DNA of 64,000 bases from Mytilus trossulus (Eukaryota), in the NCBI RefSeq assembly GCF_036588685.1, contig NC_086383.1, positions 24,986,001 through 25,050,000 of the forward strand, given 5' to 3'. This document shows positions 4,375 to 56,217 of the stretch, in pieces; position 1 is the first letter of the stretch; each line of letters opens with the position of its first letter. The notes under the pieces were generated by a model, which was not told the origin of the DNA, did not search any database, and saw only the letters and a list, made by a program, of their open reading frames with translations. The position numbers and the translations under genes were made by a program.

Positions 4375-7300
4375 ATGAAAATATTAAGAACATTGGTACG
4401 TATCTATTTCTATTTTAATTCATATATTATTCTATAGAAATTGTTTTATAGTTATAACTGATTTTTGAATATGATATTTGAACATAATATGTTAACTTTA
4501 CATACTAGTGCCTCTAATTCTCATGTTCAAAATGGTTCTTCATAAGTATTTCATTTATTCATTTTTATTTTTATTTTTTAGTATTTATTGACCTCTCGTT
4601 TACTTGATAATGCAATTATTTTCTTACACTATTTATTTATATCTTTATTTTTGTATTTTTCAATTATTTTTTTTTACCATTTATATATTTTGATTATTTA
4701 TCTATGTATCTATGCCATCATCTTTAAATGGTAAGCAATCAAGCAAAGGACATTTAAAAACTACTGATCATTTGTCAAGTTCCATTTGCAATGTTTGATC
4801 TAATTCAGATATGGTACCTTAGTCATATTCATTGTTTGTGGAGAAAAAAACGCAGGTTTTTGGCATTAAAAACACCCTCTGTGCAAAAAGCAGTACGACA
4901 CTTAGATTCGTAAGACTTTTAAAAAACTAAAAATTGTCCGTCAACATCCATTTGAACATTGAATTGTCATTTCATAAAACTAAAGTTAAGTTTGTATACA
5001 TGGTTTTTTTTTGTTTTTTTGTTTTATCTTTGGTGATTTCACATTTGTGCTCTGAAAAAAGGTGCAAACGAAGTAAACTGTATTTGATAAATGCATATTA
5101 AAATGCAGGTGCTTGTTGACATAATTGATTTGTATTATCAATACCTTCGTTTTTTAGGTATTCTTCTGTGTCTTGGCATATGGCTTCTGCCAAGAAGAAG
5201 ACCAATGTGATTCTCAGTATAATGATGATATTCTAGCAGGATTTGATTTCGATGATGCCGATAAATACCCTGAGTGAGTTAGCTTCACCTATGATGTTTT
5301 GTCTTATCATATGGCGTTTATATATCAATTAATCTTTGTTTCTTTAAAATGTTCTTAGTCTTATCAATTATACTTCAAGAAACTGATTTATAAATGATTT
5401 GGTATATATATCATATTTTATAAAATAAAGTAATTCCGAGAATCCCGTATCACGATGAAATTTTTTTTATCTCTTTTATCAACCATTTTCTACATACGAA
5501 TGCAAATGAATTTCAAACAATTTACGACTTTTCACTTTTAAAAAAAAATTAATGCATGGTCCTCCATTTTCTACATAAGAAAATGGGGAAAGATCCGTTT
5601 GCGCCAAAAATGCGTCCTTTTGTGCCACAATTTTTTTCTCCAATTCTCCAATGCTACGTTTGCGCCACCTGTTTTAAAATTACATGGTATAATTTACGCC
5701 AATAATAAAACATACGATTGCGCCAATTAGAAGAAAAATGACTCTCCTCCTCCTTTATTCGGACTTGGAACCGGCAGTTTACATGGCAAATGTGTCCTTT
5801 TCTGAAACATACTTTCTTCTTTCTGCTGATGAATGGGTACTTCCTTATATGAGGTATGTAGTGGCTTGTAACTTCACTTTATTGTCCAGAAAAATAAAAA
5901 AATGAAGGATGAAATGCATACGACAGTTCATAATAATTATCCGTGGAATGCTTTTGCTTCATTACTTGTACGTCTTGCGGAAGATAGAGTTTCAGGCCGG
6001 ATGATGGAAACAAAGCACGGTGTCATCAACATATTTGGATAAAACATGATCAGCAAAAGCTTCTGTTTTCTTCTCTTTTGGCATATCGTGTATTTAATAT
6101 TCAGCAAAGCAATAAGTTTTATTCTCTCTCTGTACATGGACTGTCTATTGCATTTTAAGTAATTTATCTCTTGATGCTCATCTTCATTGTGAAATATCTC
6201 CGACCATCTGATACTGTTTAAGCCAAAAATAAATTTACATATTGATCATTAATATTTATAATTATAGATATTTGTACAGGTAAATTGGCGCAAATGAGTT
6301 CCGATTATTGGCGCAAATGATACATTTGGAAAACAAAATTTGGCGCAAATGATACCCCTGAAAAACAGTAATTGGCGCAAAAAGACTGCTTCCATGCTGA
6401 TATATTTGTGATGTTGATTAAGCTTGATTACTCTAAATCTTATTCTATTGTAGGGGTGAAATAGCTGGGGCGGAAAGAGAACTTTCTAAACAGAATGCAA
6501 GAGATTATGAGCAGTTAAAGAGTGACAAAGACGCTGCACAAAGCCTCATTTCTTTTAATTCCAAAGAGCCGTGGATCGCACCACCGTAAGATAAATATAT
6601 TACCATATGCATTATTTTAATTGATTTTCACATTCATGCTTAACTCTGGACCACATTTGTATGCCCCTACTACGATAGTAGAGGGTGCTGTGTTTTTTGG
6701 TTTGTGCGTACGTTCGTTCGATCGTCCGTCTGTCCGCTTCATGTTCACGTTTTTTATCAAGGTAGTTTTTGAGGTAGTTGACGTCCGAACAGCTTGAAAC
6801 TTAGTACACATGCTCCCTATGATATGCTTTTTTCTAATTTTAATGACAAATAAGAGTTTTTATCCCAATTTCACGGTCCATTGAACATAGAAAATGAAAG
6901 TGCGAGTGGGCGTCCGTGTACTCTGCACACATTTTTGTTTTGAAATTTTACCTGGAAGTGTCTTCGTTCTTGTATTGTTTTATTAAGGTCCTTTAATAAT
7001 GACATAAATTACTGATAGAACACAAAATAGTTCTGCTATTAAAAGCTCAAAATCATTGCTTTCAATGGTAGGTACACGCTGTATTTGGCAAAACTTTTAG
7101 GAAATTTTGGTCTTGCACTTCAACTTTGTACTTTATTTGGCCTTATAAAAGTTTTTGATTCGAGGGTCACTGGTAAGTCTTTTGAATACAAACCGTGCGA
7201 CTGGTGTAAATACTAAATTTCTTTACATCATATAAATATATGTATATATTTGATTTGATATGAATTATAGAAATAAAAACTCAATAAAAGAGAGGCGAAA

Positions 7301-8719
7301 TGTATCAGAATTAAATTCAAACTCATAAGTCGAAATGAAACCGACATTACTATGGAAAAGAAAAAAACACCCCCAAAAAACGACTAACAAACAAACACAG
7401 GAACACAAAAAAATAAAGAAAACTAAAGACTGAGCAACAGGTACTCTACCAATGTAGGTGTGCTGCTTCTTTGTCTCCTTCAGACTTTCAAAATTGGTCA
7501 CATTGCTTCTAATTCTAACAAAATCAACTTGTACTGTATTATTATCATGTTCCTTTTTCAGTGATAAATATTTCACATTTTCTCGGGCTTTATATTTATA
7601 AATATATTTGATATCTATCGGAAAGTTGTCTTATTGGCGTTTATACCAACTCTTCTTATTTTCAAATTTGATTTTTAGACAACCTGCTGGAGCATCGATG
7701 TGTGAGTCTAAGTTCAGATCATTGAATATTGGTAAAACATTTTGGTATTATGGGGAAAAGTGTTACGTGCTGAAACCCTGGTGGAATACTGTTTTTACAG
7801 CTATAACGTATGCTGACTGCAAGTAAGTTATCAATTATTATCTTACCTCCTATACATTTCTAGGAATATGATTGGTTAAAAGCGTCCTCGTGGAAACCGT
7901 GTATATTTAATATCAGGTTATTTGGGAGGCGGGGCATATTTCATACACGGTTAGTCAATTAGTATTAACCTTCAAATTATGTAAATATACTTATGTTTTT
8001 TCTTGTTTGAGTGGTTAAAACTAGTCATTTGTTGTGCCCTTGCTGTTCGGTGTGAGCCAATGCTCCGTGTTGGAGACCGTATTTTGACCTATAATGGTTT
8101 ACTTTTAAAAATTGCGACTTAGACGGAGATTTGTCTCATTGGCACTTATACCAGATCTTTTTTATCTTTTTATGATAAGGTTCCTTACTCTTAGACATCA
8201 CTGGTTCATATTTGATCCAATACCTTTTCCAGAATGACGAGTTGTCTTTGTCAACACTGTTGTAATCCTTGAAAGATAAACAAATCGTATATTGGTTTCA
8301 AGAATTTTCATTATTGTAACATAGGACATCCTGAATCAATGACCACAATGTTTTGGTGTATTGATAACAAATCTACACAGAATGCTTTCATAAATACAAA
8401 CTACTTGACCCATAATTGTTAACACACATTGTGACTTGGGAGGAGAGTTGTCTCATTGGCATTAATTCATACCACATCTTCTTATTCATACTTTTCTCAT
8501 TTCAGACCACAATATTGTAAGAATGTTCCTTGCATGTCCTGGATGTTCCCATACAGATATAAGTGTGTACAAAGCAACTATAAAATCTTCAACATTTGGC
8601 TTTACTGTCCACAACCATTCCCACGTATACACAGACTACAACTGAAAGCTCCACAATGTTGTGAATGCAGGAAATTCAAAGCACCTTGGATTGCATTGGA
8701 AGATTTAACCAAAGAGTAG
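4375..8719 (+). CDS. Secreted Spaetzle-like cystine-knot protein, type A, copy 1 (208 aa, 5 exons)
   Basis: Exons 4375-4395, 5158-5273, 6454-6585, 7679-7822, 8506-8719, all GT..AG, phases 0,2,2,2, 627 nt open. Protein: MKILRTLVFFCVLAYGFCQEEDQCDSQYNDDILAGFDFDDADKYPEGEIAGAERELSKQNARDYEQLKSDKDAAQSLISFNSKEPWIAPPQPAGASMCESKFRSLNIGKTFWYYGEKCYVLKPWWNTVFTAITYADCKPQYCKNVPCMSWMFPYRYKCVQSNYKIFNIWLYCPQPFPRIHRLQLKAPQCCECRKFKAPWIALEDLTKE*. It has a signal peptide, an acidic pro-region with a YP motif, and a 10-Cys domain with Spaetzle-type motifs (MCES, CVQxxY, PQCCEC). The family label comes from motif recognition only. Confidence 0.9.
5585..6393. mobile_element. Putative non-autonomous DNA transposon in intron 2 of gene A, with inverted subterminal TTGCGCCA/TGGCGCAA repeats
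   Basis: Several TTGCGCCA motifs at the left end and four TTGGCGCAAA at the right end. Copies occur at 52328-53132 and, truncated, at ~31945-32628. Inverted, internally deleted relatives lie at ~60810-61130 and ~16157-16384. Confidence 0.6.
6656..6941 (+). mobile_element. DINE-1/HINE-like (Helentron-associated) element in intron 3 of gene A (also 33034-33309, 53538-53814)
   Basis: T-rich flanks, subterminal inverted ATGCCC...GGGCAT (clearest in A2/A3), a 5' palindrome ctactacgatagtag, an internal cgtccgtctgtccg microsatellite and a 3' stem-loop tgtgtactctgcacaca. Confidence 0.65.
7077..7220 (+). mobile_element. Decayed retrozyme-like fragment in intron 3 of gene A (also ~33434-33578, ~53937-54083)
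   Basis: gctgtatttggcaaaacttttaggaa...gagggtcactggtaagtcttttgaatacaaaccgtgcg matches the family body with an eroded hammerhead. Confidence 0.6.
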
Positions 8720-8875
8720 AGAAATGAGCATGTACTTTAAGTTTGAATCAGAAACTACAAGAAATTCAACTGCATATTGTGACGAAGACATTATTTTCGA
8801 ATATTGTTTTTAGATATGACATGTTTTGAAGAAAAAAAAACATGTAATTTTTCTTCACTTATTATATCAGTACTT

Positions 8876-9145
8876 AATAAATAAAAAGATTTTTGTTCAA
8901 TTATATTACTTGAAACTGTTATTATTGAAATTGCCTCTAAACACTTCTCTAGTATATCTTGCCTGATTATACCACCTTTGCACTTCAAAGCAAAATCATT
9001 GGAACCAACCTTATCGCATTTCATGAACTAATATAGAAAAAAAATTTACTATTTCTTCAAGTATTTCAATTACAATTCATTATTGTTTTATATAATTTCA
9101 TGTATGTTTGTAAGTAATTATCATTGTTTTTAAAATAAGAATAAA
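8876..9145 (+). terminator. Candidate polyadenylation signals of A1
   Basis: AATAAA at 8876-8881 and 9140-9145 downstream of the stop. This is weak evidence in AT-rich DNA. Confidence 0.35.
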
Positions 9146-9340
9146 GTTCTTTCAATCTGGTATATACTGGCATGTTTAATTTGTCTCTAAAAAGCATGTT
9201 ATTACCTTAAATTTGCCATCACCAAGACGGTTCCTGGATTTATAAACTGTTTATAAAACGAAAGAGAAGATCACGGTACTAAGAACCAAAAGTCAAATAA
9301 AATCGTAATGCCCTATGACCAAAATAAAGAACGTCGGGTT

Positions 9341-9459
9341 AGCTGTCTTTGGCAAAACTTTTAGAAATTTTGGTCCTCAATGCTCTTCAACTTCGTACTT
9401 ACCAATCGCGCGTCTGGCGTATATGCTAAATTTGGTCCTGGTATCTGTGATGAGTTTAT
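9341..9459 (+). mobile_element. 5'-truncated, internally deleted retrozyme-like insertion
   Basis: Absent from the paralogous site at ~56843 (gtcgggttttctatg). Keeps cgcgcgtctggcg and the family 3' end gatgagtttatt. Confidence 0.6.
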
Positions 9460-10583
9460 TTTCTATGAATACTACGACTAAAGATTGGGAAAAACACGAA
9501 TCCAACCAACAAAAAAGGGCTTCCTTTCAACACTATACAAATGAAACTAAACATTGAAAACCCCAGGGATGAACTCATGTCTACAATTTGGAAATTAGTA
9601 TGGCGTTCATTATCACTGAACTAGTATAATATTTGCTAAGGGGCCAGCTGGAGGGCGCCTCCGGGTGCGGGAATTTCTCGCTACATTGAAGACCTGTTAG
9701 TGAACTTCTTCTGTTGTTTTTTATATGGTCGGGTTGTTGTCTCTTTGACTATTTCCCCATTTCCATTCTCAATTTTATCTTCTGCAGGAAGTTGCAGTTC
9801 TTGCTCCATTAGTGATATTTAGTAAAATAGAGGCGAAAGATTCAAGAGAGACATTCAAACTTATAAGTCGAATACAAACTGACAACGCCATTGCTAAAAC
9901 AAACACCAACATACAATTGATAGTACATAAAAAATAGAATAGAAACTAAAGATTTAGCAGCACGAATATCATCAAAACCTATAGGGTTGAACGCATGTGC
10001 TCTGAAAGGGAAAGCAGATCATGTTCCATGTGGCACCCGTCGTGTGGCTCATGTTTGTACAAACACGGTACTAGGTATAATTTGGGAGGTCAGATGTGTG
10101 AAAAGGAAACCTGCATATGACGCTCAAAGGTAACTGAACGAATACATTGTCCTCTTGAAGTACTGCTGTAAAGTTGCTTTTTATATTATTTGCACTTTTT
10201 TTTATCAAAAGAAGCAGTTTCTATCACAAATGATATCTAACGTATCTTATATATTTATTTCAAACTTGGAAAGATGTCTGTTTGTCAAAATTTAATACCA
10301 TACTCATGTGAAAAAAGAGGTCTCATTCGCAATTTTTTTTTTATCAGAATGCTAAAAAAAATTATCAGGAAATGAAAATGTTATTAACTTCGTCTCATTA
10401 ATTATAAAAGCTTATAAAAGTACCAGCAATGTATTACTATTCCAGTTTCCGGATCATCAAATCATGGAGTGAAATAAAAGAGTTCGGTTTTTTTCTTATT
10501 CTTTTTCTGGACTATTTTTTTTTTTATTAAATCTAAATCAAGGAACACAAAGTCCAGGAGTTGCCGTTAGTTGCTATTATATA

Positions 10584-13500
10584 TAGGGTTGTCACTGACT
10601 CAGACGTACTTATGAATATAATTATTTTCTGTGACTGTATCTTACATTAATTTGTAGGATCCTTTACTATAGATAATTTAGCTGATCTGTAACAATAACA
10701 TCTTCATGCCTTATATATCATGTACTGTAGTACGCCGCTAGATTAAAACTGACGTGGAAAGGTAACATATGGCCACCGAAAGCTCTTTTTTTGAGAGCCC
10801 AGGTGGTCATGTGGTCTAGCGGGACGGCTGCAGTGCAGGCGATTTGGTGTCACGATATCACAGTAGCATGGGTTCAAATCCCGGCGAGGGAAGAACCAAA
10901 AAAATTTGCGAAAGCAAATTTACAGATCTAACATTGTTGGGTTGATGTTTAGACGAGTTGTATATACATTATGTACACAGCCATGTATCACCATCATTGA
11001 TGGCGATCCGATGGATACATCTGTTGTAGGGTTGTCACTGACTCAGACGTACTTATGAATATAATTATTTTCTGTGACTGTATCTTACATTAATTTGTAG
11101 GATCCTTTACTATAGATAATTTAGCTGATCTGTAACAATAACATCTTCATGCCTTATATATCATGTACTGTAGTACGCCGCTAGATTAAAACTGACGTGG
11201 AAAGGTAACATATGGCCACCGAAAGCTCTTTTTTTGAGAGCCCAGGTGGTCATGTGGTCTAGCGGGACGGCTGCAGTGCAGGCGATTTGGTGTCACGATA
11301 TCACAGTAGCATGGGTTCAAATCCCGGCGAGGGAAGAACCAAAAAAATTTGCGAAAGCAAATTTACAGATCTAACATTGTTGGGTTGATGTTTAGACGAG
11401 TTGTATATACATTATGTACACAGCCATGTATCACCATCATTGATGGCGATCCGATGGATACATCTGTTGTAGGGTTGTCACTGACTCAGACGTACTTATG
11501 AATATAATTATTTTCTGTGACTGTATCTTACATTAATTTGTAGGATCCTTTACTATAGATAATTTAGCTGATCTGTAACAATAACATCTTCATGCCTTAT
11601 ATATCATGTACTGTAGTACGCCGCTAGATTAAAACTGACGTGGAAAGGTAACATATGGCCACCGAAAGCTCTTTTTTTGAGAGCCCAGGTGGTCATGTGG
11701 TCTAGCGGGACGGCTGCAGTGCAGGCGATTTGGTGTCACGATATCACAGTAGCATGGGTTCAAATCCCGGCGAGGGAAGAACCAAAAAAATTTGCGAAAG
11801 CAAATTTACAGATCTAACATTGTTGGGTTGATGTTTAGACGAGTTGTATATACATTATGTACACAGCCATGTATCACCATCATTGATGGCGATCCGATGG
11901 ATACATCTGTTGTAGGGTTGTCACTGACTCAGACGTACTTATGAATATAATTATTTTCTGTGACTGTATCTTACATTAATTTGTAGGATCCTTTACTATA
12001 GATAATTTAGCTGATCTGTAACAATAACATCTTCATGCCTTATATATCATGTACTGTAGTACGCCGCTAGATTAAAACTGACGTGGAAAGGTAACATATG
12101 GCCACCGAAAGCTCTTTTTTTGAGAGCCCAGGTGGTCATGTGGTCTAGCGGGACGGCTGCAGTGCAGGCGATTTGGTGTCACGATATCACAGTAGCATGG
12201 GTTCAAATCCCGGCGAGGGAAGAACCAAAAAAATTTGCGAAAGCAAATTTACAGATCTAACATTGTTGGGTTGATGTTTAGACGAGTTGTATATACATTA
12301 TGTACACAGCCATGTATCACCATCATTGATGGCGATCCGATGGATACATCTGTTGTAGGGTTGTCACTGACTCAGACGTACTTATGAATATAATTATTTT
12401 CTGTGACTGTATCTTACATTAATTTGTAGGATCCTTTACTATAGATAATTTAGCTGATCTGTAACAATAACATCTTCATGCCTTATATATCATGTACTGT
12501 AGTACGCCGCTAGATTAAAACTGACGTGGAAAGGTAACATATGGCCACCGAAAGCTCTTTTTTTGAGAGCCCAGGTGGTCATGTGGTCTAGCGGGACGGC
12601 TGCAGTGCAGGCGATTTGGTGTCACGATATCACAGTAGCATGGGTTCAAATCCCGGCGAGGGAAGAACCAAAAAAATTTGCGAAAGCAAATTTACAGATC
12701 TAACATTGTTGGGTTGATGTTTAGACGAGTTGTATATACATTATGTACACAGCCATGTATCACCATCATTGATGGCGATCCGATGGATACATCTGTTGTA
12801 GGGTTGTCACTGACTCAGACGTACTTATGAATATAATTATTTTCTGTGACTGTATCTTACATTAATTTGTAGGATCCTTTACTATAGATAATTTAGCTGA
12901 TCTGTAACAATAACATCTTCATGCCTTATATATCATGTACTGTAGTACGCCGCTAGATTAAAACTGACGTGGAAAGGTAACATATGGCCACCGAAAGCTC
13001 TTTTTTTGAGAGCCCAGGTGGTCATATGGTCTAGCGGGACGGCTGCAGTGCAGGCGATTTGGTGTCACGATATCACAGTAGCATGGGTTCAAATCCCGGC
13101 GAGGGAAGAACCAAAAAAATTTGCGAAAGCAAATTTACAGATCTAACATTGTTGGGTTGATGTTTAGACGAGTTATATATACATTATGTACACAGCCATG
13201 TATCACCATCATTGATGGCGATCCGATGGATACATCTGTTGTAGGGTTGTCACTGACTCAGACGTACTTATGAATATAATTATTTTCTGTGACTGTATCT
13301 TACATTAATTTGTAGGATCCTTTACTATAGATAATTTAGCTGATCTGTAACAATAACATCTTCATGCCTTATATATCATGTACTGTAGTACGCCGCTAGA
13401 TTAAAACTGACGTGGAAAGGTAACATATGGCCACCGAAAGCTCTTTTTTTGAGAGCCCAGGTGGTCATGTGGTCTAGCGGGACGGCTGCAGTGCAGGCGA

Positions 13501-15387: not shown

Positions 15388-15389
<2 letters not shown>
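10584..15389 (+). repeat. Tandem array of ~10.9 x 443-bp units with a tRNA-derived (SINE-like) Pol III head, inserted in a TA microsatellite
   Basis: Unit starts (tagggttgtcactg) at 10584, 11027, 11470, 11913, 12356, 12799, 13242, 13685, 14127, 14571 and 15014 (partial). Units are near-identical and the array is flanked by TA runs. The empty paralogous site is at ~57769-57774. Confidence 0.95.
10793..11235 (+). ncRNA. Predicted ~440-nt structured Pol III transcript (one per array unit)
   Basis: A-box TGGTCATGTGG 10804-10814, B-box/T-arm GGTTCAAATCC 10871-10881, T7 at 11229-11235, and extensive 5'/3' end pairing with G-U wobbles. Transcription is inferred, not shown. Confidence 0.5.
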
Positions 15390-15423: not shown

Positions 15424-15425
<2 letters not shown>

Positions 15426-44835: not shown

Positions 44836-47800
44836 AGTTGTGATTTCTCTTCTTGAATGAGTCGAGTGTTGTATGATTTGAACTTCGCGGTGTCTTGCCT
44901 TTATATCGAAAAAGCATCTATATCATTGGATAAAGGATCGGCAAATGAAAATGAACGTAAACAATTTAAAGTTTGGTCATCGAACCATAAGAAAAGAAAT
45001 CGACATCACAAAGGAGTGTAGATAATATCAGTATATAATTTAATGGATAATAAGTATGACATGCGCCATAAGGCATGAACTTCTTTATTGAATTAAATAC
45101 TTAAGTAAAGTAAAACTGCTGATTTTGTTTCCGTAAATAATCCTGGTTGTAAAAAAAAACAGTATTGCTTCAGCAGACTCCATAAGGAAATACATTTACG
45201 TTAACTCAACTTATAAAAAATAAGAATTGAAGATCAAAGGAATTGTCAAATGAATTAACAAATCTAAGGTAAACGGGATCAATTAAAATTAAAACGAAAT
45301 GTGTGTAGGATGGGAAGATTCGCTTGTGTTTTCTTTGTCACTTGTTTAGCAGTGTTTACAGTACTTCCAATAAAATACATGCTTTATGTTTTGAATATTA
45401 TACTTTACTAAATGAAGAAGACACTAACATTTATTATATATTAACAAAAGAATTTTTCATCAAATAAATATATAAAATGGGTACATACACTCTTTTCAGT
45501 ATTATCAAGATAAAAAAAAGTCTCAAAATAAAAGAATTAAAAAAATTTGAGACAAAAAGCTTCAAAATAAAACATATATATATCGTCTAAAATATGCTTT
45601 TCATCGAAAAACAGTTGGTTGTTTTCAAACAAAAAGAAGATGCATATGGTTGCTGTATGTGTGTTCGCAATGAAATAATACTCAATATGATTTTAACCAC
45701 GACTACAATTTCTTTTTAGAATATTCACCTTGAATTATAGAACTATCACTTCATCAGTTTGTATTTATATATAAGAGGGACGAAAGATACCAAAGGGACT
45801 GTCAAACTCATCAATCTAAAACAAACTAACAACGCCATGGCTAAACATGGAAAAGACAAACAGAAAAACAACAGCACACCTGACACAACATAGAAAAATA
45901 AAGAATAAACAACACGAATATAACAGGTGTTCATTGATTTGATTACTCCACCATTGTCTACACACAAAAATGCCTGTACTTAGTGAGGATTATGACAGTT
46001 GTTATCCATATATTTGATGAATTGAACTTTTAATTTTGCCTTTTGATTAAGGACTTTTAATTTTTTGTTTTTTATTTTCCTCGGAGTGGGGTATATTTGT
46101 TATTTTACTTTTTGAAATTTATAAACTTCACATTTGTCTTAAATGCTGCTATTTTCAACAATCAAAAATATATTACTACTTAAAAAATAAAGCGGAAGAT
46201 ACCGAAGGTATATCTAAAACTCAAATGTCGACGAAAAACAATATAGCAATAAACTGAAAAGCACAAAAGACAAGCTAATCAACACAAAATACGATGACAT
46301 ATAGCTGTTGATTTCTGTCATTTTTGGGGATCTTGTGCAGAGTTGTCTCATTGGTAATCCTACTACATCTTCTTTTTTGTAGATACAAGGTTAGATTGTG
46401 TTAGCAAGAAAGAGACAGTGGATATCAAAGGGACGATATAAATGCATAAGCCGAAGATAGACAAAACAAAAACCCACAGAAAATGAGAAATAAAAATAAT
46501 AAATGGAGCATCAACAGTTAACAATGCACTACATAGATATCTAAAGATTGAGCAACTCCAAAAAAAAGGAGTGTCGAATAGAAAAAAAGAGTGTCGAATA
46601 GAAAAAAGAGTGCCAAATAGAAAAAAGAGTGTCGAATAGAAAAAAACGAGTGTCGAATAAAAAAAAAAGAGTGTCGAATAGTAAAAAAAAAGTGTCGAAT
46701 AGAAAAAAAAGTAGACGAATTCTTAATTAGAACCAAAAACATTTTTTTCTATCATAAATGATGGAAAGGACATAAAGGACATAAACGTGTGTTTTTGTCT
46801 ATAAGTTCATTGACTAAACACATTTTAAGTCATTTTTAAGGGTTAACTTTTTGGTTTTAAATAAAGAATGAACAAATGGATATTGTAACGTTTGTTATTT
46901 TATCATTTTCATTTAAAAAAACGAAAAAGAAAAGAAATACTTTTTTTGTATTTTCAAGATGATGTAATTTACAACAATAAAGATAAATTATTAGTTTAAG
47001 CAAGCAACTTTAAAAAAATAAGTTTTGTCAGATGAACATAAATATGTTTTAATAAAGCCTCTACATAAACATAAACTGTTGACAGATATATGCAGAATTA
47101 TCTGATAATTTTTGAAGCATTAAAATAAAATCAAAGAACTCCTAAAACCATATCATGTTAACCAAGCCCTACTAACTTCACTGGACCGTTGATGTTCGTA
47201 TATTTTACTGTAAGATTAAATGGATACATGTCCACCAATCAAAATTCTCTATCTTATTTTTCTGACAAGTATTTTACACAAAAATTTTTTAAGGGTACCA
47301 AATAATGATAATGTATAGTTTAATTTTAAAAATCTTTTATAAACTATTGAAGAAAAAAAAACAATTTCCATTTTATAATATTGGAGCTGATACTTGAATT
47401 CACAAAATTTCAAGCTTTTTCCCAAATAGTTAAATTTTTGCGTTATTATGTGAAAATGTATATGCTTTTTAAAAATTATATAACATAAGAATGTGAAGTA
47501 TGATTGCCAATGAAGATATCTATCGCCCAAAAACTAACTACAAACACATTGAAGGAACGAAATGACAATGCCAATGAGAAGCCCTTCGAGACGTATTTTG
47601 GGTTTTATTTTCTATTCACAAGTTTGGATGAATGTTTTACGCATGATCTCGGGTGAAATCCCGAAAATTAAATACAAGATAATGTGTTCAACATCAGTCA
47701 TAAAAGAATAACTTTTTTTATACGCAGAAATTTATAACCTTCCAAATATGTTTTACATGTAGCGATGTAAAATTCACATATTACTACTTTCAAGTCTATT

Positions 47801-50800
47801 CTTGTTATGTTTTATTTATTTATTTTAGTTTTAATTATTTGAAAATCGACGAAGATCATAATGCATAAACAACTTAAACAAAACATAACCTAAACTTTGA
47901 AAATATGGTGTACAGTCATAGGACAAAAGTGAGTTCCCATTCAAAAATAATTTTATCATTTCAACTAAAATCGATTTCCAAAAAATTGTTCAAAGTGACT
48001 TTTTGGATGACTTTCATATAATAGATACCCTAAGATGTAGAAGTTTAATTGTTTAATGTGTCATAACTTTTGTGATGGATGTTATCATTATCTAATGGGT
48101 AAAACACAAATGCAAATTTTATGATTTTATTTTGGTTAGAATACATGGCAAACTTTTCCAGAATTTTTTTTCTCTGAGTTCACCTAGTCAGAAAATAAAT
48201 ATGAGCCTGATTAATATCAGGGCCAAATTAACAATAAAACTTCAAACAATTCTACATATTTTTTTGTTTATTTCATATAAATCAGTGGTGTAGTTATTAT
48301 GAAATATGTTTTTGAAAAATATTGATTTTAGTTGAAATGATAAGACATTTATTGAGTGATAACTCACTTTTGTCCACTGACTGCACTCTTTTAGGGAAAA
48401 AAGAACTACATATAATTCTAATATATCAAATTTTAAAAAGAAAAAAATACCTATGGGATAATCCAAATTTATAAACCGACAAACGATTTTAAAAAGCACG
48501 AAGCAATGAACAATATTCAAAATACTACATAGAAAACTAAAAATAAAAATTGATCAACAAGAACTTTACCGAAAATCAGAGTTGAACAGAAAAATTTGTT
48601 TTGATATATGATTGAAAGATTAGGATGACAAAAACTATTCGTGTACTTTTTTAAAATATATATTTGATGCATCAACTCAAAATGTAATATTTAGTGAATC
48701 CTTTCATGTACAAATTTAAGTACTGTAATTACATTAAACTTAAACAAAAAATAAAATTTTCCATATTTTCATCATTTTATTTGCAAAAAAGGAAAAGAAA
48801 ATACTTTGGTTTACATGTACTATTATTGGTAGTTGCAATTTATTCTGCATATTAACAGCAGTAAACTTTAATTCTTTTTAAAGGAAGCAACTTACAAAAG
48901 AAAACATTAGATATTTTTTATTAGCATTTTAATATTTTGTTTGATGAAGCCGGTAATTAAAATGAAAGTTGTTGACTAAGTTCGTGTTGCTTATTCTTTA
49001 GTTTGATATGTTGTCTCATGTGTACTATCGTTTGTCTGTTTGTCTTTTTCATTTTTTGCCATGGTGTTGTCAGTATATTTTCGATTTATGAGTTTGACTG
49101 TCCATCTGGTGTCATTTCTCCCTCTTTTAAAAAAGGTTTGATCGCTTGATAATGAAATTCTTTTTAAAATAGCATTGAAATTCATGTTATGTAAACTTTA
49201 AACCTAAAACAATTAATAAACATACAACTATAATTACAACATAGATGAACATAACAGCAAAACATCTTTTGCTTCACATGACCATTGATATTTGCATACT
49301 TTAACTCTCTAAGATTTCCATAACCAATAGTCCATTTTCAAATTACCGATTTGAATATGTTATTACACATTTTAAAAATAAATGACTTCCCTTTGTCAAT
49401 TGTAGGCTGGTTTTATACCGGACAAAATTGTTTTGTTTTGCCCATACAAAGCATAAGTTAAACATCGGCGTTTCAACATTTGTATTATAACTGGTGTCGA
49501 AGTGTAGAGTTTAACAACAAATTAAATGGATCAAAAAATTTGAAAAACTTACAGGTTACACACAAACCGCACAGATAAATTTACTCCTGTCGATCCTCTT
49601 TTTACTCCCTAAATTTGATGCTAAAATGGACAACTGAGTTTACCATACATGATAACAAATTGATTTTTTTCATCTCACTCTTGTTGCATACTTATATGTT
49701 ATCTGACATGCCATACGATCTAACGTATATCAATGATAAGATATGCCAGGAGTTATGTTCATTTTTGTAGACTGCACAGAAATATGCTACTATTTACTCA
49801 TAACGCTTACGACATTTTTCTAAATAAAAAATAAAGCTTGCTCGGTTCTATAACTCAGGAAGGGTATACTGTAGACAAATCGCGCTATTTCACTTTAAAA
49901 CTAATTTTTTGTGACTCTTTAAGTAATTGAATCACACAAGTCACAGGTTCAAGATCTCTAAGGTCTTCGTCACGAGTAGGAAAATTAATTGTTGCAGCTT
50001 TTCACTTTCTCATTACTTAGAACCATCATATCCTTCAAATTCATCTGCCATGGTCAACCATGTAAATAAACAACGACCTTTGAAATTTATCAGTTCCCTT
50101 TTTCCCTATTCTGTTTTCATTAAAAGAAGAACGAAAGATACCAGAGGGACAGTCAAACTCATAAATCGAAAATAAACTGACAACGCCATGGCTAAAAATG
50201 AAAAAGACAAACAGACAAACAATAGTACACATGACACAACATTGAAAACTAAAGAATAAACAACACGAACCCCAATATGACAATTGTATTACTTTGAATA
50301 TATTTTGAAAAAACAGTCGGAAGATATCAAAAGGACAATAAAAATTCAATAGACCGATAAAACCATGACAAAACAAGGAGAAACAACGAAAAGACAGTAT
50401 ATAAAACACTAAAGAGAAAACTAAAGATCAGGCACCATGAACTTGAAGATAATGTTATCTAGACTTTTGTTTCATACATAACTAACATTGTTGTTTTCAT
50501 AAATGATGAAAATGATGCAATTATAAACAATTCCAATATCCAAGAGTTTTTATATCTTTATAACGAAATTTGTTTTGCATTAGACAAAATATTATACTCT
50601 TTTTTCAGGTACAAATTTTAGTATTTACTTTAAACTTTAATAAAAACTAAGTGTTTCCTTATTTTTATTATTTTCTTAAAAAGAAAAAGATAAAGTTTGA
50701 TAAAAATGCACTAAATTATTATTTAAAGGAAACAACTTTTAACAAATATTTTTTTGTTTGCCGAAAACAGTTTACTTCGCAACTCGTTTGAATACTTTTT

Positions 50801-51109
50801 TTAGTAATGAAATAAATTTGTTGACAATATTTACCAATGATCGCCTGATAATAAAATTTAAAAATAGCACTAAAATACACACAAAAGACATTTAATATAA
50901 ACCTAGCCCTTCTGACATGAATTAACATAACATCAGTTAAAATCTTATCAACATTTTGCTTCAGTGGACAATTGAAATCCGCAAACGCTCACTCTTATTT
51001 TGATTGGATATAATATCCACCAATCACAATTCTCCATCCAGTATAAATACAACGAACGGCGCTTAATTCAAATTATCAACATATTCAGCAGCAACGATAT
51101 TGATCCAAG

Positions 51110-54100
51110 ATGAAAATATTAAGAACATTGGTACGTATCTATTTCTATTTTAATTCATATATTATTCTATAGAAATTATTTTATAGTTATAACTGATTTT
51201 TGAATATGATATTTGAACATAATATGTTAACTTTACATACTAGTGCCTCTAATTCTCATGTTCAAAATGGTTCTCCATAAGTATTTCATTTATTCATTTT
51301 TATTTTTATTTTTTAGTATTTATTGACCTCTCGTTTACTTGATAATGCAATTATTTTCTTGTACTATTTATTTATATCTTTATTTTTGTATTTTTCAACT
51401 ATTTTTTTTTACCATTTATATATTTTGATTATTTATCTATGTATCTATGCCATTATCTTTAAATGGTAAGCAATCAAGCAAAGGACATTTAAAAACTGCT
51501 GATTATTGTCAAGTTCCATTTGCAATGTTTGATCTAATTCAGATATGGTACCTTAGTCATATTCATTGTTTGTGGAGAAAAAAACGCAGGTTTTTGGCAT
51601 TAAAAACACCCTCTGTGCAAAAAGCAGTACGACACTTAGATTCATAAGACGTTTAAAAAACTAAAAATCGTCCGTCAACATCCATTGGAACATTGAATTG
51701 TCATTTCATAAAACTAAAGTTAAGTTTGTATACATGTTTTTTGGTTGTTTTTTTTTTATCTTTGATGATTTCACATTTGTGCTCTGAAAAAAAGTGCAAA
51801 CTAAGTAAACTGTATTTGATAAATGCATATTAAAATGCAGGTGCTTGTTGACATAATTGATTTGTATTATCAATACCTTCGTTTTTTAGGTATTCTTCTG
51901 TGTCTTGGCATATGGTTTCTGCCAAGAAGAAGACCAATGTGATTCTCAGTATAATGATGATATTCTAGCAGGATTTGATTTCGATGATGCCGATAAATAC
52001 CCTGAGTGAGTTAGCTTCACCTATGATGTTTTGTCTTATCATATGGCGTTTATATATTAATTAATCTTTAATTTAATTTGTTTCTTTAAAATGTTCTTAG
52101 TCTTATCAATTTTATTTCAAGAAACTAATTCATAAATGATTTGGTATATATATATTATTTTATAAAATAAAGTAATTCCGAGAATCCCGTATCACGATGA
52201 TTTTTTTTTTATCTCTTTTATATACCATTTTCTACATACGAATGCAAATGAATTTCAAACAATTTACGATTCTTCACTTTTAAAAGCATTTTGAATGCAT
52301 GGTCTTCCATTTTCTACATAAGAAAATGGGGAGAGATCCGTTTGCGCCAAAAATGCGTCCTTTTGTGCCACAACTTTTTTCTCCAATTCTCTAATGCTAC
52401 GTTTGCGCCCCCTGTTTTAAAATTACATGGTATCATTTGCGCCAAAGATAAAACATACGATTGCGCCAATTTGAAGAAAAATGACTCCCCTCCTCTTTTA
52501 TCGGACTTGAAACCGACAGTTTACACGGCAAATGTGTCCTTTTCTGAAACATACTTTCTTCTTACTGCTAATGAATGGGTATTCCTTATATAATGTATGT
52601 AGTAGCTTGTAACTTCACTTTATTGTCCAGAAAAATAAAAAATGAAGGATACAATGCATACGACAGTTCATAATAATTATCCGTGGAATGCTTTTGCTTC
52701 ATTACTTGTACGTCTTGCGGTAGATAGAGTTTCAGGCCGGATGGTGGAACAAAGCACGGTGTCATCAACATATTTGGATAAAACATGATCAGCAAAAGCT
52801 TCTGTTTTCTTCTCTTTTGGCATATCGTGTATTTAATATTCAGCAAAGCAATAAGTTTTATTCTCTCTCTGTACATAGACTGTCTATTGCATTTTAAGTC
52901 ATTTCTCCCTAGATGCTCATCTTCATTGTGAAATATCTCCGACCATCTGATACTATTTAAGCCAAAAATAAATTTACATATTAATCATTTAAATTTATAA
53001 TTATAGATATTTGTACAGGTAAATTGGCGCAAATGAGTTCCGATTATTGGCGCAAATGATACATTTGGAAAACAAAATTTGGCGCAAATGATACCCCTGA
53101 AAAACAGTAATTGGCGCAAAAAGACTGCTGCCAGAAAATGCATGTACCAAGTCAGGAATATGACAGCTGTTATCCATTCGTTTTATGTTTTTGAACTTTG
53201 ATTTGCCATTTCCGTTTTGAATTTTCCTCGGAGTTCGGTATTTATGTTATTGTAAAGCTAGCATGAAATATTTCCATGCTGATATATTTGTGATGTTGAT
53301 TAAGCTTAATTACTCTAAAACTTATTCTATTGTAGAGGTGAAATAGCTGGGGCGGAAAAAGAACTCTCTAAACAGAATGCAAGAGATTATGAGCAGTTAA
53401 AGAGTGACAAAGATGCTGCACAAAGCCTCATTTCTTTAAATATCAAAGAGCAGTGGATCGCACCACCGTAAGATAAATACATTACCATATGCATCATTTT
53501 AATTGATTTTCACATTCATGCTTAACTCTGGACCACATTTTTATGCCCCTGCTACGATAGTAGAGGATGTTGTGTTTTCTGGTCGTTCGATTGTCCGTCT
53601 GTCCGCTTCATGTTCACGTGTTTTAGCTAGGTAGTTTTTGAGGTAGTTGACGTCCGAACAGCTTGAAACTTAGTACACATCACATGCTCCCTATGATATG
53701 ATTTTTCTTATTTTATTGACAAATAAGAGTTTTTATCCCAATTTCAAGGTCCATTGAACATAGAAAATGATAGTGCGAGTGGGCATCTGTGTACTCTGCA
53801 CACATTTTTGTTTTGAATTTTTACTTGGAAGTGTTTTCGTTCTTGTATTTTTTCATTAATGACATAAATTGCTGACAGAACACAAAAAAGTTCTGCTATT
53901 TAAAGCTCAAAATTATTGCTTTCAATGGTAGGTACACGCTGTATTTGGCAAAACTTTTAGGAAATTTTGGTCCTCTTTGCTCTTCAACTTCGTACTTTAT
54001 TTGGCCTTGATTCGAGGGTCACTGGTAAGTCTTTTGAATACAAACCGTGCGTCTGGTGTAAATATTAAATTTCAATCCTGGTATAAGAATAAGAATAAGA

Positions 54101-56217
54101 ATAAGAATACTTTATTAATCCAATTATGGACCCTTGCGGGTTTTAAATTTCATACAATGATTACAATGATTTGTCATAACAATGAAATAATAAAATGAAA
54201 TACATGACAATAGAACACTGAACAGTTATTGCATGCACATGGAATAGAAAGTAATATGGGAGACAATCAATTTCTGTAAGGATTATTCCCCTTTAAACAG
54301 ATGTGGTGTTTTGAGTTGCATAAAAATGATATGCAGCCCCAACTGATAAGATATAAAGGTATTGTTCTCCCATGTACACACAGCAACCAATTACTAGATA
54401 TTTATGTATATAATTATATTTTTTGACAATTGCAAGAATATGATTAGCACCTTAGAGTTTTACTGCAGTTTGTTAATGCATATATAAGTATTTACATATT
54501 TATGACGAGTTTCTTTACATCATATAAGTATATGTATATATTTGATTGTAAATATGAATTATAGACATAAAAACTCCATAAAAGAGAGGCAAAATGTACC
54601 AGAATTAAATTCAAACTCATAAGTCGAAACGAAACCGACATAACTATGGAAAAGAAAAAAACACCCCAAAAAACGACTAACAAACACAGGAACACAAAAA
54701 AATAAAGAAAACTAAAGACTGAGCAACAGAAACTCTACCAATGTATGTGTGCTGCTTCGTTGTCTCTTCAAGACTTTCAAAATTGGTCAAATAGCTTCTA
54801 ATTATTAACAAAAACAACTTAGACTGTGATATCATTATGTTCCTTTTTCGGTGATGTATATTTCACAATTCCTAGGCCTCTATATTTATAAATATATTTG
54901 ATATCTATCGGAAAGTTGTCTCATTGGCGTTTATACCAACTCTTCTTATTTTCAAATTTGATTTTTTTAGACAACCTGCTAATGCATCGATGTGTGAGTC
55001 TAAGTTCAGATCATTGAATATTGGTAAAACATTTTGGTATTATGGTAAAAAGTGTTACGTGCTGAAACCCTGGTGGAATACTGTTTTTACAGCTATAACG
55101 TATGCTGACTGCAAGTAAGTTATCAATTATTATCTTATCTCCTATACATTTCTAGGAATATGATTGGTTAACAGCGTCCTCGTGGAAACCGTGTATATTT
55201 AATATCAGGTTATTTGGGAGGCGGGGCATATTTCATACACGGTTAGTCAATTAGTATTAACCTTCAAATTATGTAAATATACTTATGTTTTTTCTTGTTT
55301 GAGTGGTTAAAACTATAGTCATTTGTTGTGCCCTTTATATCTTGTTGTTCGGTGTGAGCCTATGCTCCGTGTTGAAGACCGTATTTTGACCTATAATGGT
55401 TTACCTTTAAAAACTGCGACTTAGACGGAGATTTGTCTCATTGGCACTTGTACCAGATCTTTTATATCTTTTTATGACAAGGTACCTTACTCTTAGACAT
55501 CACTGGTTCATATTTGATCCAATACCTTTTCCAGAATGACGAGTTGTCTTTGTCAACACTGTTGTAATCCTTGAAAGATAAACACATCGTATATTGGTTT
55601 CAAGAATTTTCATTCTTGTAATATACCAATTTTCGTGGTTTTCGTGGGTACAGGTGAACCACGAATTCAAACGTTCAACGAATTACACATTTTCTATAGG
55701 CTTTGTTCTAGTATGCAGATATTGGCAAAACCACGAATTAAATCAAATATCCACGAAAATGCTGGTTTTTGTCAATCCACGAAAATTGATACCCACGAAA
55801 ATAAATGAGTCCACAGTAGGACATCCTGAATCAATGACCACAATGTTTTGGTGTATATATAACAAATCTACACAGAATGCTTTCATAAATACAAACTACT
55901 TGACCCATAATTGTTAACACACATTGTGACTTGAAAGGAGAGTTGTCTCATTTCTCATTGGCATTCATATCACATTTTCTTATTCATACTTTACTCATTT
56001 CAGACCACAATATTGTAAGAATGTTCCTTGCATGTCCTGGATGTTCCCATACAGATATAGGTGTGTACAAAGCAACTATAAAATCTTCAACATTTGGCTT
56101 TACTGTCCACAACCATTCCCACGTATACACAGACTACAACTGAAAGCTCCACAATGTTGTGAATGCAGGAAATTCAAAGCACCTTGGATTGCATTGGAGG
56201 ATTTAACCAAAGGATAG
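51110..56217 (+). CDS. Spaetzle-like cystine-knot protein, type A, copy 3 (208 aa)
   Basis: Exons 51110-51130, 51890-52005, 53336-53467, 54971-55114, 56004-56217; intact. The protein matches A2 except K157R. Confidence 0.9.

What the first reader, a model, noticed from the sequence alone, without database searches (positions are those of the whole stretch)
4375..56217. Tandemly amplified head-to-head pair of two divergent Spaetzle-like genes, largely hidden from the ORF track
Seen: five intact genes in the order A> <B A> <B A>, with B and A divergently oriented about 5.9-6.3 kb apart. A and B share exon phases and ten aligned cysteines but are otherwise strongly diverged, so the pair is old and its amplification recent. 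Known: arthropod Spaetzles are pro-proteins whose cystine-knot dimers activate Toll receptors, and cystine-knot heterodimer partners are sometimes encoded by linked genes. Bivalves have many TLRs whose endogenous ligands are poorly defined. Inference: a co-regulated two-subunit secreted system (Toll-ligand-like, or a secretory/structural role) under dosage amplification.
Basis: partly seen in the sequence, partly recalled or inferred. Interest (0 to 1): 0.8.

Follow-up and report, generated by a model that had tools for sequence, protein, structure and literature searches.

The report
Amplified paired Spaetzle-like mussel genes
A mussel chromosome carries three tandem copies of a back-to-back pair of genes for two old, divergent secreted cystine-knot proteins of the Spaetzle/coagulogen/nerve-growth-factor type, which are expressed but whose function is untested.

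Summary
The window (Mytilus trossulus chromosome piece C11) holds five intact 5-exon genes, A> <B A> <B A>, at exactly the stated ends. A sixth gene (B) lies 2.1-5.7 kb before the window, so the array is three <B A> pairs in ~20-27 kb segmental duplicates.

All six exon models equal RefSeq "uncharacterized proteins". RNA-type contigs break exactly at the last splice acceptors of both genes.

A (208 aa) and B (181 aa) are 31% identical. They share exon phases and ten knot cysteines.

Both belong to a very small family; every source I looked up is a bivalve or unnamed. Its only sequence signals, all below curated thresholds, point to Spaetzle:
- Pfam PF16077, 12-20 bits against a cut-off of 27.
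- Aedes Spz1C in the PDB, E 0.0019.

Predicted folds are cystine knots. Coagulogen, Spaetzle, IL-17 and NGF tie as best matches.

- **Supported:** secreted Spaetzle-like pro-proteins, an old pair, later amplification, purifying selection.
- **Not shown:** heterodimer, co-regulation (separate TATA promoters 5.9-6.5 kb apart), Toll binding, read-depth proof of copy number.

The scan noted similar Spaetzle-like clusters elsewhere in this genome (four notes).

The parts
4375..8719 (+). Gene A1 (208 aa). Coding exons 4375-4395, 5158-5273, 6454-6585, 7679-7822, 8506-8719.
   Evidence: GT-AG introns, phases 0,2,2,2. The exon translations equal RefSeq XP_063405658.1 (LOC134689618, P0001) piece by piece.
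21102..24890 (-). Gene B1 (181 aa). Coding exons 24870-24890, 23571-23680, 22896-23006, 22383-22523, 21102-21264.
   Evidence: The exon translations equal P0053 (XP_063407164.1/XP_063407165.1, LOC134690921/20).
30816..35696 (+). Gene A2 (208 aa). Coding exons 30816-30836, 31570-31685, 32832-32963, 34459-34602, 35483-35696.
   Evidence: Equals P0020 (LOC134690918). RNA-type contigs start exactly at 35483 and carry 68 (X1) or 374 (X6) further upstream letters that do not lie on the genomic stretch (records 1 and 25).
41124..44835 (-). Gene B2 (181 aa, protein identical to B1). Coding exons 44815-44835, 43524-43633, 42849-42959, 42404-42544, 41124-41286.
   Evidence: The 652-nt contig in X6 (record 32) covers 41029-41286 and has 397 further letters off the stretch, which equals exons 1-4 (383 nt) plus 14 nt.
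51110..56217 (+). Gene A3 (208 aa). Coding exons 51110-51130, 51890-52005, 53336-53467, 54971-55114, 56004-56217.
   Evidence: Equals P0017 (LOC134690919).
1..17636 (.). Duplication unit 1 (begins at window -10289, outside the window). It carries B0 (outside the window) and A1. Its tail is interrupted by a 443-bp satellite array at 10584-15402.
   Evidence: Self-BLAST.
17848..36012 (.). Duplication unit 2 (B1 + A2). Its head and tail are shorter than in units 1 and 3. The unit 1/2 junction lies at 17636-17848.
   Evidence: 95.4-97.0% identity to unit 3.
36464..62392 (.). Duplication unit 3 (B2 + A3). The unit 2/3 junction at 36012-36464 differs from the unit 1/2 junction.
4285..4313 (+). Core promoter of A1: CCAAT at -90 and TATAAAT at -68 from the ATG. 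The same elements sit at the same offsets before A2 (TATA at 30748) and A3 (TATA at 51042).
   Evidence: present in 3 of 3 A copies.
24954..24984 (-). Core promoter of B1: CCAAT at -94 and TATAAAG at -70 from the ATG. The same elements sit before B2 (TATA at 44905) and B0.
   Evidence: present in 3 of 3 B copies.

Best explanation
Three tandem segmental duplicates each carry a divergently transcribed pair of five-exon genes. Both genes encode secreted pro-proteins with the same layout: a signal peptide, a short N-terminal stretch with a conserved cysteine, a helical hairpin, a disordered linker, and a C-terminal cystine-knot domain of about 100 residues with ten cysteines.

A and B are old paralogues within a small, very divergent family that is closest to arthropod Spaetzle. 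At the fold level the family belongs to the Spaetzle/coagulogen/NGF group.

- **Shown:** gene structure, intactness, identity with RefSeq models, splicing and presence in RNA-type runs, purifying selection, predicted cystine-knot fold, and sub-threshold Spaetzle affinity.
- **Inferred:** the proteins are secreted, matured by cleavage in the exposed linker, and dimerise through the knot. They then act as extracellular ligands. Toll/TLR-type receptors are the leading candidates but are untested.

The amplification reflects the copy-number dynamism of the Mytilus edulis species complex rather than proven dosage selection.
For: **Structure and intactness**
- They are identical to six RefSeq loci.
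- RNA-type contigs from three runs of three studies break exactly at the exon-5 acceptors of A2 and B2. The upstream lengths fit exons 1-4.
- dN/dS is 0-0.51 in 6 of 6 copy pairs.

**Family size**
- 15 proteins reach E <= 0.001 among 1.84 billion representatives.
- Of the 7 whose source I looked up, 5 are Mytilus, 1 is oyster and 1 is an unnamed transcript assembly.

**Spaetzle affinity**
- Pfam Spaetzle is the only domain family matching the cysteine-rich C-terminal domain; three chance-level hits lay elsewhere (see full report). B scores 12.9-16 bits and paralogue P0006 scores 19.8 bits over profile positions 3-95 of 96.
- The family profile against PDB sequences finds Aedes Spz1C at E 0.0019 over the whole knot, with 7 cysteines aligned including CCxC.
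- ESM Atlas: 15 of 30 nearest clusters are Spaetzle-bearing, for both A and B.

**Fold, model A**
- An unbiased scan of 48,161 chains gives coagulogen Z 5.7, Spaetzle Z 5.0, IL-17 Z 4.6 and NGF Z 4.5.
- 22 of the first 23 rows are named cystine-knot proteins.
- Drosophila Spaetzle chains are the top four in the second look, at 21-25% identity.

**Fold, model B**
- Coagulogen Z 5.5, then noggin and NGF.
- All 46 Foldseek rows shown are cystine-knot growth factors.
Against: - No member reaches the Pfam gathering score (27 bits), and A has no Pfam hit at all.
- PF16077 scanned over the whole genome gives nothing over its cut-off.
- Structural Z-scores are modest (5-5.7). By the tool's own notes they are within the range of common arrangements, and rows within 1 Z unit are tied.
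- The models are of middling confidence (mean pLDDT 68.5 and 69.1, pTM 0.59) and come from shallow alignments of 25 and 24 sequences.
- The linker before the knot has no Arg or dibasic site in A or B, only a Lys 14-15 residues before the first knot cysteine.
- No tissue, infection or receptor data could be obtained.
- An NF-kB-like motif is at chance level (2 found, 1.12 expected).
Confidence: 0.7

Rival explanations
1. A and B are obligate partners of one two-subunit (heterodimeric) ligand, kept together and co-amplified as a module.
For: - The pair is kept as adjacent-numbered records in M. californianus, M. coruscus, M. galloprovincialis and M. edulis.
- All three duplications copied both genes.
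- A second cluster on C6 also co-amplifies two divergent family members three times.
- A clusters with the C6 D-type, and a B+C clade is not rejected (p-AU 0.16). The module itself may therefore have been duplicated.
- A lacks the C-terminal cysteine that B and most relatives keep.
- A and B contigs co-occur in 3 runs and are both absent in 1.
Against: - No dimer model or biochemical test was possible.
- The promoters are separate and about 6 kb apart.
- Any 20-kb segmental duplication copies its neighbouring genes, whatever their function.
- In the C6 cluster the two types are head-to-tail, not head-to-head.
- The runs were selected with a stretch that holds both genes, so co-occurrence is biased.
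- The clades tested were named after the tree had been seen.
Confidence: 0.2
2. The proteins are coagulogen-like clottable or structural secretory proteins. Excision of the helical segment would expose the knot for polymerisation (wound plug, mucus or another secreted matrix), and high copy number would serve bulk production.
For: - Horseshoe-crab coagulogen is the single best full-length structural match for both models. For A it scores Z 5.7 with 140 of 175 residues aligned (model 24-195). For B it scores Z 5.5 with 138 aligned, about 2 Z units above the next row.
- The layout resembles coagulogen as I recall it: an N-terminal cysteine, a helix, then the knot.
- Contig depth was high in one run (B 541, A 112 in X1). 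The tool warns that depth is a poor measure.
Against: - There is no sequence signal to coagulogen. Pfam gives no hit at E <= 1, and coagulogen is absent from the PDB profile search at E <= 10.
- Coagulogen is the only NGF-like entry solved with its N-terminal part, which inflates its aligned length against Spaetzle entries that hold the knot alone.
- Z 5.5-5.7 is modest.
- Arg-type cleavage sites flanking the helix are absent.
Confidence: 0.12
3. They are cystine-knot proteins of another functional class, such as an IL-17-like cytokine or a sclerostin/DAN/noggin-like antagonist, and not Spaetzle-type ligands.
For: - IL-17 chains score Z 4.4-4.8 for model A, within 1 unit of Spaetzle.
- Sclerostin is the top Foldseek hit for B (E 5.9e-3) and a weak PDB profile hit (E 0.44).
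- One M. edulis paralogue carries the automatic name 'SOST'.
Against: - There are no Pfam IL17, DAN, sclerostin or noggin hits at E <= 1.
- Sequence identity in structural alignments is 8-14% to IL-17 against 21-25% to Spaetzle.
- The only sub-threshold sequence hits covering the whole domain are to Spaetzle.
Confidence: 0.08
4. The three units are partly an assembly artefact, with uncollapsed haplotypes placed in tandem, so the real copy number per haplotype is lower.
For: - Units 2 and 3 differ by only 3-4.6% in non-coding DNA. A2/A3 differ by 4 coding nucleotides and B1/B2 by 3. From recall, that is within the range of mussel allelic divergence.
- Read depth was not tested.
Against: - Three units exceed two haplotypes.
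- The two junctions differ in structure, and unit 1 alone holds the satellite expansion.
- No extra A or B exons exist on other contigs of the assembly.
- M. edulis records hold 7 distinct A proteins and 6 distinct B proteins on one chromosome, although some may be isoforms.
Confidence: 0.1

Closest known systems
Arthropod Spaetzle (Pfam PF16077; PDB 3E07, 4BV4, 4LXR/4LXS, Aedes Spz1C 7B1B/7B1C)
   Same: - Secreted pro-protein with a C-terminal cystine knot of about 100 residues.
- Seven cysteines, including the C-terminal CCxC, align with Spz1C.
- Highest sequence identity among structural matches, 21-25%.
- The only Pfam and Atlas affinity.
   Different: - Below the Pfam threshold, and A has no hit.
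- Ten or eleven knot-domain cysteines instead of seven.
- No Arg activation site before the knot.
- A confidently predicted helical hairpin in the pro-region.
- Seen only in bivalve records among the sources I looked up.
- Toll binding is untested.
Horseshoe-crab coagulogen (PDB 1AOC)
   Same: Best full-length structural match for both A and B (Z 5.7 and 5.5, 138-140 residues aligned). The N-terminal segment, the helix and the NGF-like knot all sit in one chain.
   Different: No detectable sequence similarity. Cleavage sites and clotting behaviour are unknown here.
Vertebrate neurotrophins (NGF, BDNF, NT-3, NT-4/5)
   Same: Top Foldseek matches for model A (E 3.7e-3, TM to target 0.50-0.62). 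Same knot fold and pro-protein logic.
   Different: No Pfam NGF hit; 9-15% identity; no furin RXXR site.
Clam Paphia undulata Spaetzle homologue (Yu et al. 2015, as cited in PMC7773633; the original was not read)
   Same: A mollusc gene that its authors called Spaetzle-like. The 2020 paper says it was the only one described outside arthropods (passage read).

Membership tests
Spaetzle (Pfam PF16077) | Score at or above the curated gathering threshold (27 bits) | tested here: not met
   - A has no hit at E <= 10 exon by exon or at E <= 1 full length.
- B scores 16 bits (last exon) and 12.9-13.2 bits (full length).
- The best paralogue, P0006, scores 19.8 bits at E 0.0013.
- The genome-wide scan finds none over the cut-off.
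Spaetzle (Pfam PF16077) | NGF-like cystine-knot fold of the C-terminal domain | tested here: met
   AlphaFold2 models give a knot region with block pLDDT of about 59-88. In a scan of 48,161 chains, 22 of the first 23 rows are named cystine-knot proteins. Drosophila Spaetzle scores Z 5.0-5.4. This is a prediction only.
Spaetzle (Pfam PF16077) | Canonical cysteine framework, including the C-terminal CCxC | tested here: met
   The profile alignment to Aedes Spz1C places 7 cysteines in register. The family adds 3-4 further cysteines. Disulfide pairing itself was not testable.
Spaetzle (Pfam PF16077) | Pro-domain removed by a clip-domain serine protease at an Arg just before the knot (feature recalled) | tested here: inconclusive
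   The linkers of A and B have no Arg or dibasic site. Each holds one Lys, 14 (A) or 15 (B) residues before the first knot cysteine, inside a segment with pLDDT below 50.
Spaetzle (Pfam PF16077) | Disulfide-linked dimer that binds and activates a Toll receptor | not testable with these tools
   Structure prediction folds single chains only, and there are no binding data.
Coagulogen (horseshoe-crab clottable protein) | Sequence similarity to coagulogen | tested here: not met
   No Pfam family other than Spaetzle hits the knot at E <= 1. 1AOC is absent from the PDB profile hits at E <= 10.
Coagulogen (horseshoe-crab clottable protein) | Full-length fold: N-terminal segment plus helix packed on an NGF-like knot | tested here: inconclusive
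   Coagulogen is the top structural match for both models, but only at Z 5.5-5.7 and rmsd 4.6-5.4 A.
Neurotrophin (Pfam PF00243) | Pfam match and a furin-type RXXR pro-peptide site | tested here: not met
   No Pfam NGF hit. No RXXR before the knot. Only fold-level similarity.
IL-17 (Pfam PF06083) | Pfam match | tested here: not met
   No hit at E <= 1. Structural Z 4.4-4.8 at 8-14% identity.
Sclerostin/DAN | Significant sequence match | tested here: not met
   PDB profile E 0.44 and 1.7, C-terminal 40 residues only. The name 'SOST' appears on one paralogue as an automatic label.

The most novel reading that the evidence does not exclude
A and B are the two subunits of a Spaetzle-like ligand module. 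The module has been copied as a unit both locally (3 x on C11) and between chromosomes (the C/D pairs on C6). This would give mussels a combinatorial set of endogenous, protease-matured ligands for their expanded Toll-like receptors. It would be the first such ligand system outside arthropods.
Probability: 0.12. Interest if true: 0.8.

Novelty: new variant of a known kind. Interest (0 to 1): 0.55.

Why it matters
Bivalves have very large Toll-like receptor repertoires, but essentially no endogenous ligand has been characterised. A 2020 mussel immunology paper states that no Spaetzle homologue had been described outside arthropods apart from one clam gene (PMC7773633, passage read).

This locus supplies concrete reagents: expressed and conserved candidates with exact gene models, a paired genomic layout, and copy-number variation among Mytilus species. 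With them, three questions become directly testable. Do mollusc Tolls use cytokine-like ligands? Do A and B pair? Or are they coagulogen-like structural proteins?

If they prove to be none of these, the locus is still a clean example of recent segmental amplification of an old gene pair.

Tried and rejected
**Approaches that gave little or nothing**
- **Pfam on single exons.** Only the last exon of B gave a weak Spaetzle hit.
- **The search for homologous proteins.** I queried the family alignment (capped at 8,000 candidates), B and P0006. These returned only 5, 2 and 4 Mytilus clusters. None carried precomputed Pfam domains, so there is no bridge to bona fide Spaetzle proteins.
- **PF16077 over the whole genome.** Nothing was over the cut-off. 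Exon-wise six-frame search is insensitive for a split domain.
- **Profile-profile comparison with a Spaetzle alignment.**
- **NF-kB-like motif.** At chance level.
- **tRNA and Rfam scans.** Nothing in the satellite or elsewhere in the window.
- **Literature.** I searched Spaetzle/Spatzle with Mytilus, bivalve and mollusc terms. Searches were too loose to be useful. Twelve accession numbers of A and B proteins appeared in no main text. Coagulogen with mollusc terms gave nothing relevant. Supplements were closed, so expression or proteome tables listing these accessions could exist unseen.
- **Duplication history.** A simple two-step tandem-duplication history did not fit the two different junctions together with the similarity pattern, in which units 2 and 3 are closest. 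I leave the history open.
- **Cysteine-parity argument for a free interchain cysteine.** Dropped, because the signal-peptide cleavage point (before or after Cys18 of A) is unknown.


Full report
**What is in the sequence**

The window is AT-rich eukaryotic DNA from G000:C11:24986001-25050000. Protein look-ups identify contig C11 (71,253,669 bp) as a Mytilus trossulus RefSeq chromosome.

Self-BLAST of the window, and of the window extended by 30 kb upstream and 20 kb downstream, shows three tandem units:
- Unit 1 runs from window -10289 to about 17636.
- Unit 2 runs from 17848 to 36012.
- Unit 3 runs from 36464 to about 62392.

Pairwise identities are 90-97%. Units 2 and 3 are 95.4-97.0% identical.

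The two junctions differ. Unit 2 has a shorter head and tail than units 1 and 3. Only unit 1 holds a 4.8-kb array of a 443-bp satellite (10584-15402, copies 99.5-99.8% alike). At least two separate rearrangements are therefore needed. I could not fit a simple history to them.

**Gene models**

Reading the open frames and splice signals and mapping each exon onto all units gives two gene types, each with five coding exons.

| | A (plus strand) | B (minus strand) |
|---|---|---|
| Exon lengths (nt) | 21, 116, 132, 144, 214 | 21, 110, 111, 141, 163 |
| Protein | 208 aa | 181 aa |
| Intron phases | 0,2,2,2 | 0,2,2,2 |

All 20 introns of the five genes in the window are GT-AG, as are the four of B0, and no exon has an internal stop. 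The genes are:
- A1 4375-8719
- B1 21102-24890
- A2 30816-35696
- B2 41124-44835
- A3 51110-56217

The finding's ends are the A1 ATG and the A3 stop. B-to-A start distances are 5,925 and 6,274 bp.

A third B gene (B0) lies before the window, at window -5655 to -2130, which is C11:24980345-24983870. It sits 6,504 bp from A1. The locus is therefore three complete <B A> pairs, not 2.5. No further A or B exons were found elsewhere in the 1.3-Gb assembly.

That step was left out. Each exon translation was matched piecewise to database proteins:
- A1 = XP_063405658.1 (LOC134689618)
- A2 = LOC134690918
- A3 = LOC134690919
- B0 = LOC134690922
- B1 = B2 = LOC134690921/20

All six are named 'uncharacterized protein'. 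The genes are hidden from a plain ORF list but not from RefSeq.

**Expression and splicing**

The look-up of sequencing runs was given the tail-to-tail stretch 35400-41350, which holds the last exons of both A2 and B2. The runs it returned are coded and only guessed to be RNA, and are kept as contigs.

I laid four of them, from four studies:
- **X1:** a 285-nt contig begins exactly at 35483, the first base of A2 exon 5. It has no mismatches and carries 68 further upstream letters that do not lie on the genome stretch.
- **X6:** a 686-nt contig does the same with 374 upstream letters. A 652-nt minus-strand contig covers 41029-41286 and ends at the first base of B2 exon 5, with 397 further letters, which equals exons 1-4 of B (383 nt) plus 14 nt.
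- **X4:** holds both last exons.
- **X16:** holds neither.

These breaks at the acceptors show spliced transcripts of both genes. One X1 contig (41257-41350) runs on into the intron, so some unspliced RNA or DNA is present too.

Co-occurrence (three runs with both, one with neither) is weak evidence for co-expression, because the runs were chosen with a stretch containing both genes. Contig depth cannot rank genes. Tissue and condition are unknown.

**Promoters**

Every A copy has CCAAT at -90 and TATAAAT at -68 from its ATG. Every B copy has CCAAT at -94 and TATAAAG at -70 (3 of 3 each).

The two core promoters are 5.9-6.5 kb apart, and the space between them holds repeat-derived open frames that recur in each unit. 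This is a head-to-head arrangement, not a shared bidirectional promoter.

An NF-kB-like consensus occurs twice in the window, inside B exon 4. The expected number is 1.12, and 32 of 100 shuffles reach 2.

**What the proteins are**

A and B are 31% identical (E 5e-23). Ten knot-domain cysteines align, and one N-terminal cysteine aligns as well. A lacks the C-terminal cysteine that B and most relatives keep.

A profile of last exons of A, B and two paralogues was searched against 1.84 billion representative proteins. It found only 15 proteins at E <= 0.001. Of the 7 whose source I looked up, 5 are Mytilus, 1 is oyster, and 1 is an unnamed transcript assembly. The other 8 were not looked up.

Sequence evidence on family:
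- **Pfam:** Spaetzle is the only family matching the knot domain, and always below the 27-bit threshold. B scores 16 bits on its last exon alone and 12.9-13.2 bits full length. Paralogue P0006 scores 19.8 bits (E 0.0013) over profile positions 3-95 of 96. A has no hit. Three unrelated chance-level hits also appeared: DDX23 on A exon 3, and a 12-TM membrane-protein family and Bestrophin-like on the hydrophobic signal-peptide exon of B.
- **PDB sequences:** the eight-member family profile hits two constructs of Aedes aegypti Spz1C at E 0.0019 over the whole knot, with seven cysteines in register including CCxC. Sclerostin follows at E 0.44 and 1.7. Nothing else appears at E <= 10.
- **ESM Atlas:** 15 of 30 nearest clusters are Spaetzle-bearing, at scores of 0.93-0.94, for both A and B. 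This is a lead, not a test.

**Fold**

AlphaFold2 was run on P0001 (= A1) and P0053 (= B1/B2) with family alignments of 25 and 24 sequences. The models have mean pLDDT 68.5 and 69.1, and pTM 0.59. Each model has:
- an N-terminal helix (the signal peptide);
- a confident helical hairpin (A residues 46-80, block pLDDT 86-93);
- a linker with pLDDT below 50 (A 82-94, B 78-84);
- a long-stranded beta domain.

Structure searches gave these results:

| Search | Result |
|---|---|
| Foldseek, model A | Nothing at E <= 0.001. All 42 rows shown are cystine-knot growth factors, led by neurotrophins (E 3.7e-3). Spaetzle 3E07 is at rank 18. |
| VIA second look, model A | Four Drosophila Spaetzle entries first (Z 5.0-5.4, 21-25% identity), then IL-17 (4.8), noggin, coagulogen and NGF (4.5). 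|
| VIA wide scan of 48,161 chains, model A | Coagulogen Z 5.7 (140 of 175 residues aligned, model 24-195), Spaetzle 5.0, IL-17A 4.6, NGF 4.5, noggin 4.2. Of the first 23 rows, 22 are named cystine-knot proteins and one has an uninformative title. Only 67 chains reach Z 2. |
| VIA second look, model B | Coagulogen first (Z 5.5, 138 aligned), then noggin 3.6 and NGF 3.0. |
| Foldseek, model B | Sclerostin, NT-3, VEGF-family proteins, coagulogen, NGF and Spz1C. |

These Z values are modest, and rows within 1 unit are tied. What is robust is the cystine-knot growth-factor fold of the Spaetzle/coagulogen/NGF kind. Which subfamily it belongs to rests mainly on the weak sequence signals, and those favour Spaetzle.

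**Membership versus resemblance**

The family fails the Pfam Spaetzle threshold. It has 10-11 knot cysteines instead of seven. It shows no Arg or dibasic site in the linker: A and B each have a single Lys 14-15 residues before the first knot cysteine.

I therefore call it Spaetzle-like and do not file it as a Spaetzle family member. Scanning PF16077 over the whole genome found nothing over the cut-off. That method is insensitive to domains split by introns.

**Age of the pair and of the amplification**

In a family tree (the tool gave long-branch warnings), A groups with the D-type genes of a second cluster on C6 (support 91/87). B groups with an unnamed transcript lineage that is 38% identical to it (96/98).

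Holding A and B alone as one clade is rejected (p-AU 0.00095). A B+C clade is not rejected (p 0.16). The groups for both tests were named after the tree had been seen.

Both A and B exist in M. californianus and M. coruscus as records with adjacent numbers. So the pair predates the genus.

Among the copies, dS is 0.017-0.066 and dN/dS is 0-0.51. Coding differences between units 2 and 3 (4 nt in A, 3 nt in B) are far fewer than the 3-4.6% divergence of the non-coding DNA around them. This fits purifying selection or gene conversion.

Trees of the orthologues show two A and two B sub-lineages within the M. edulis complex. M. trossulus holds only one of each. M. edulis records on one chromosome hold 7 distinct A proteins and 6 distinct B proteins, though some may be isoforms. 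Copy number therefore varies among species.

**A parallel cluster**

C6:66287056-66331326 holds three copies of another two-gene unit of the same family. One gene is C-type (P0002-like), and one M. edulis copy of it is automatically named 'SOST'. The other is D-type (P0007-like). Within a unit the two genes are head-to-tail.

Earlier notes of this scan describe Spaetzle-like clusters on other pieces of this genome. I read them after forming my view, and they did not change it.

**Mechanism, with status**

- **Shown:** two expressed, intact, conserved genes per unit, and a predicted secreted pro-protein with a cystine knot.
- **Inferred (moderate):** secretion, cleavage in the exposed linker, dimerisation through the knot, and action as an extracellular ligand.
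- **Inferred (weak):** that the receptor is a Toll/TLR, that A and B heterodimerise, and that the amplification serves dosage.

The main functional rival is a coagulogen-like clottable or structural role. The main technical rival is partial haplotype duplication in the assembly. I could not test that by depth, because the single read-laying run went to the RNA question.

**Limits**

- Supplements of papers were closed.
- The run identities were coded.
- No multimer prediction was available.
- Of the papers, I read only passages of PMC7773633. All other papers were seen as search listings only.
- Statements about Spaetzle activation by clip proteases, coagulogen cleavage, and mussel heterozygosity are from recall.

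Noticed in passing
window 10584-15402: There is an array of about 11 head-to-tail copies of a 443-bp unit, 99.5-99.8% alike. It is present only in unit 1, at a site where unit 3 (57769-57778) has no array. ARAGORN finds no tRNA in 10400-11600, and Rfam finds no family anywhere in the window.
   Followed up: partly
G000:C6:66287056-66331326 (L021-L026): A second cluster of the same family holds three copies of a two-gene unit. One gene is C-type (P0002-like, 5 exons) and the other is D-type (P0007-like). The order is C> D> <D <C <D <C.
   Followed up: partly
window 3309-3692, 29752-30135, 50044-50427 (minus strand); also 18580-18816 and 38583-38819: Cysteine- and phenylalanine-rich open frames of 79-128 aa recur in each unit between B and A. 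The 38583-38819 copy lies in bins with very high contig depth in all four runs, which suggests an abundant interspersed repeat.
   Followed up: no
L019:6541-7518 (window 70541-71518, plus strand): An intronless 326-aa open frame matches the mitochondrial carrier family (PF00153, E 1.7e-34, three repeats) about 14 kb downstream of A3.
   Followed up: partly
L016:6154-6882 (window -23846 to -23118) and window -13214 to -12876: Two open frames begin with a hydrophobic leader and are followed by acidic proline/serine-rich repeats. They have no Pfam match and may be another secreted-protein gene in two copies upstream of the array.
   Followed up: no
G000:C3:63456834-63456980, C9:37972565-37972777, C14:27455373-27455603: Further last-exon-like matches of the family lie on three other chromosomes. 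The C14 copy has three in-frame stops and is probably a pseudogene.
   Followed up: no
window 72576-74573 (L019/L020): There is a short tandem repeat with a period of about 500 bp, in 3-4 copies that are 93-95% alike, downstream of the array.
   Followed up: no
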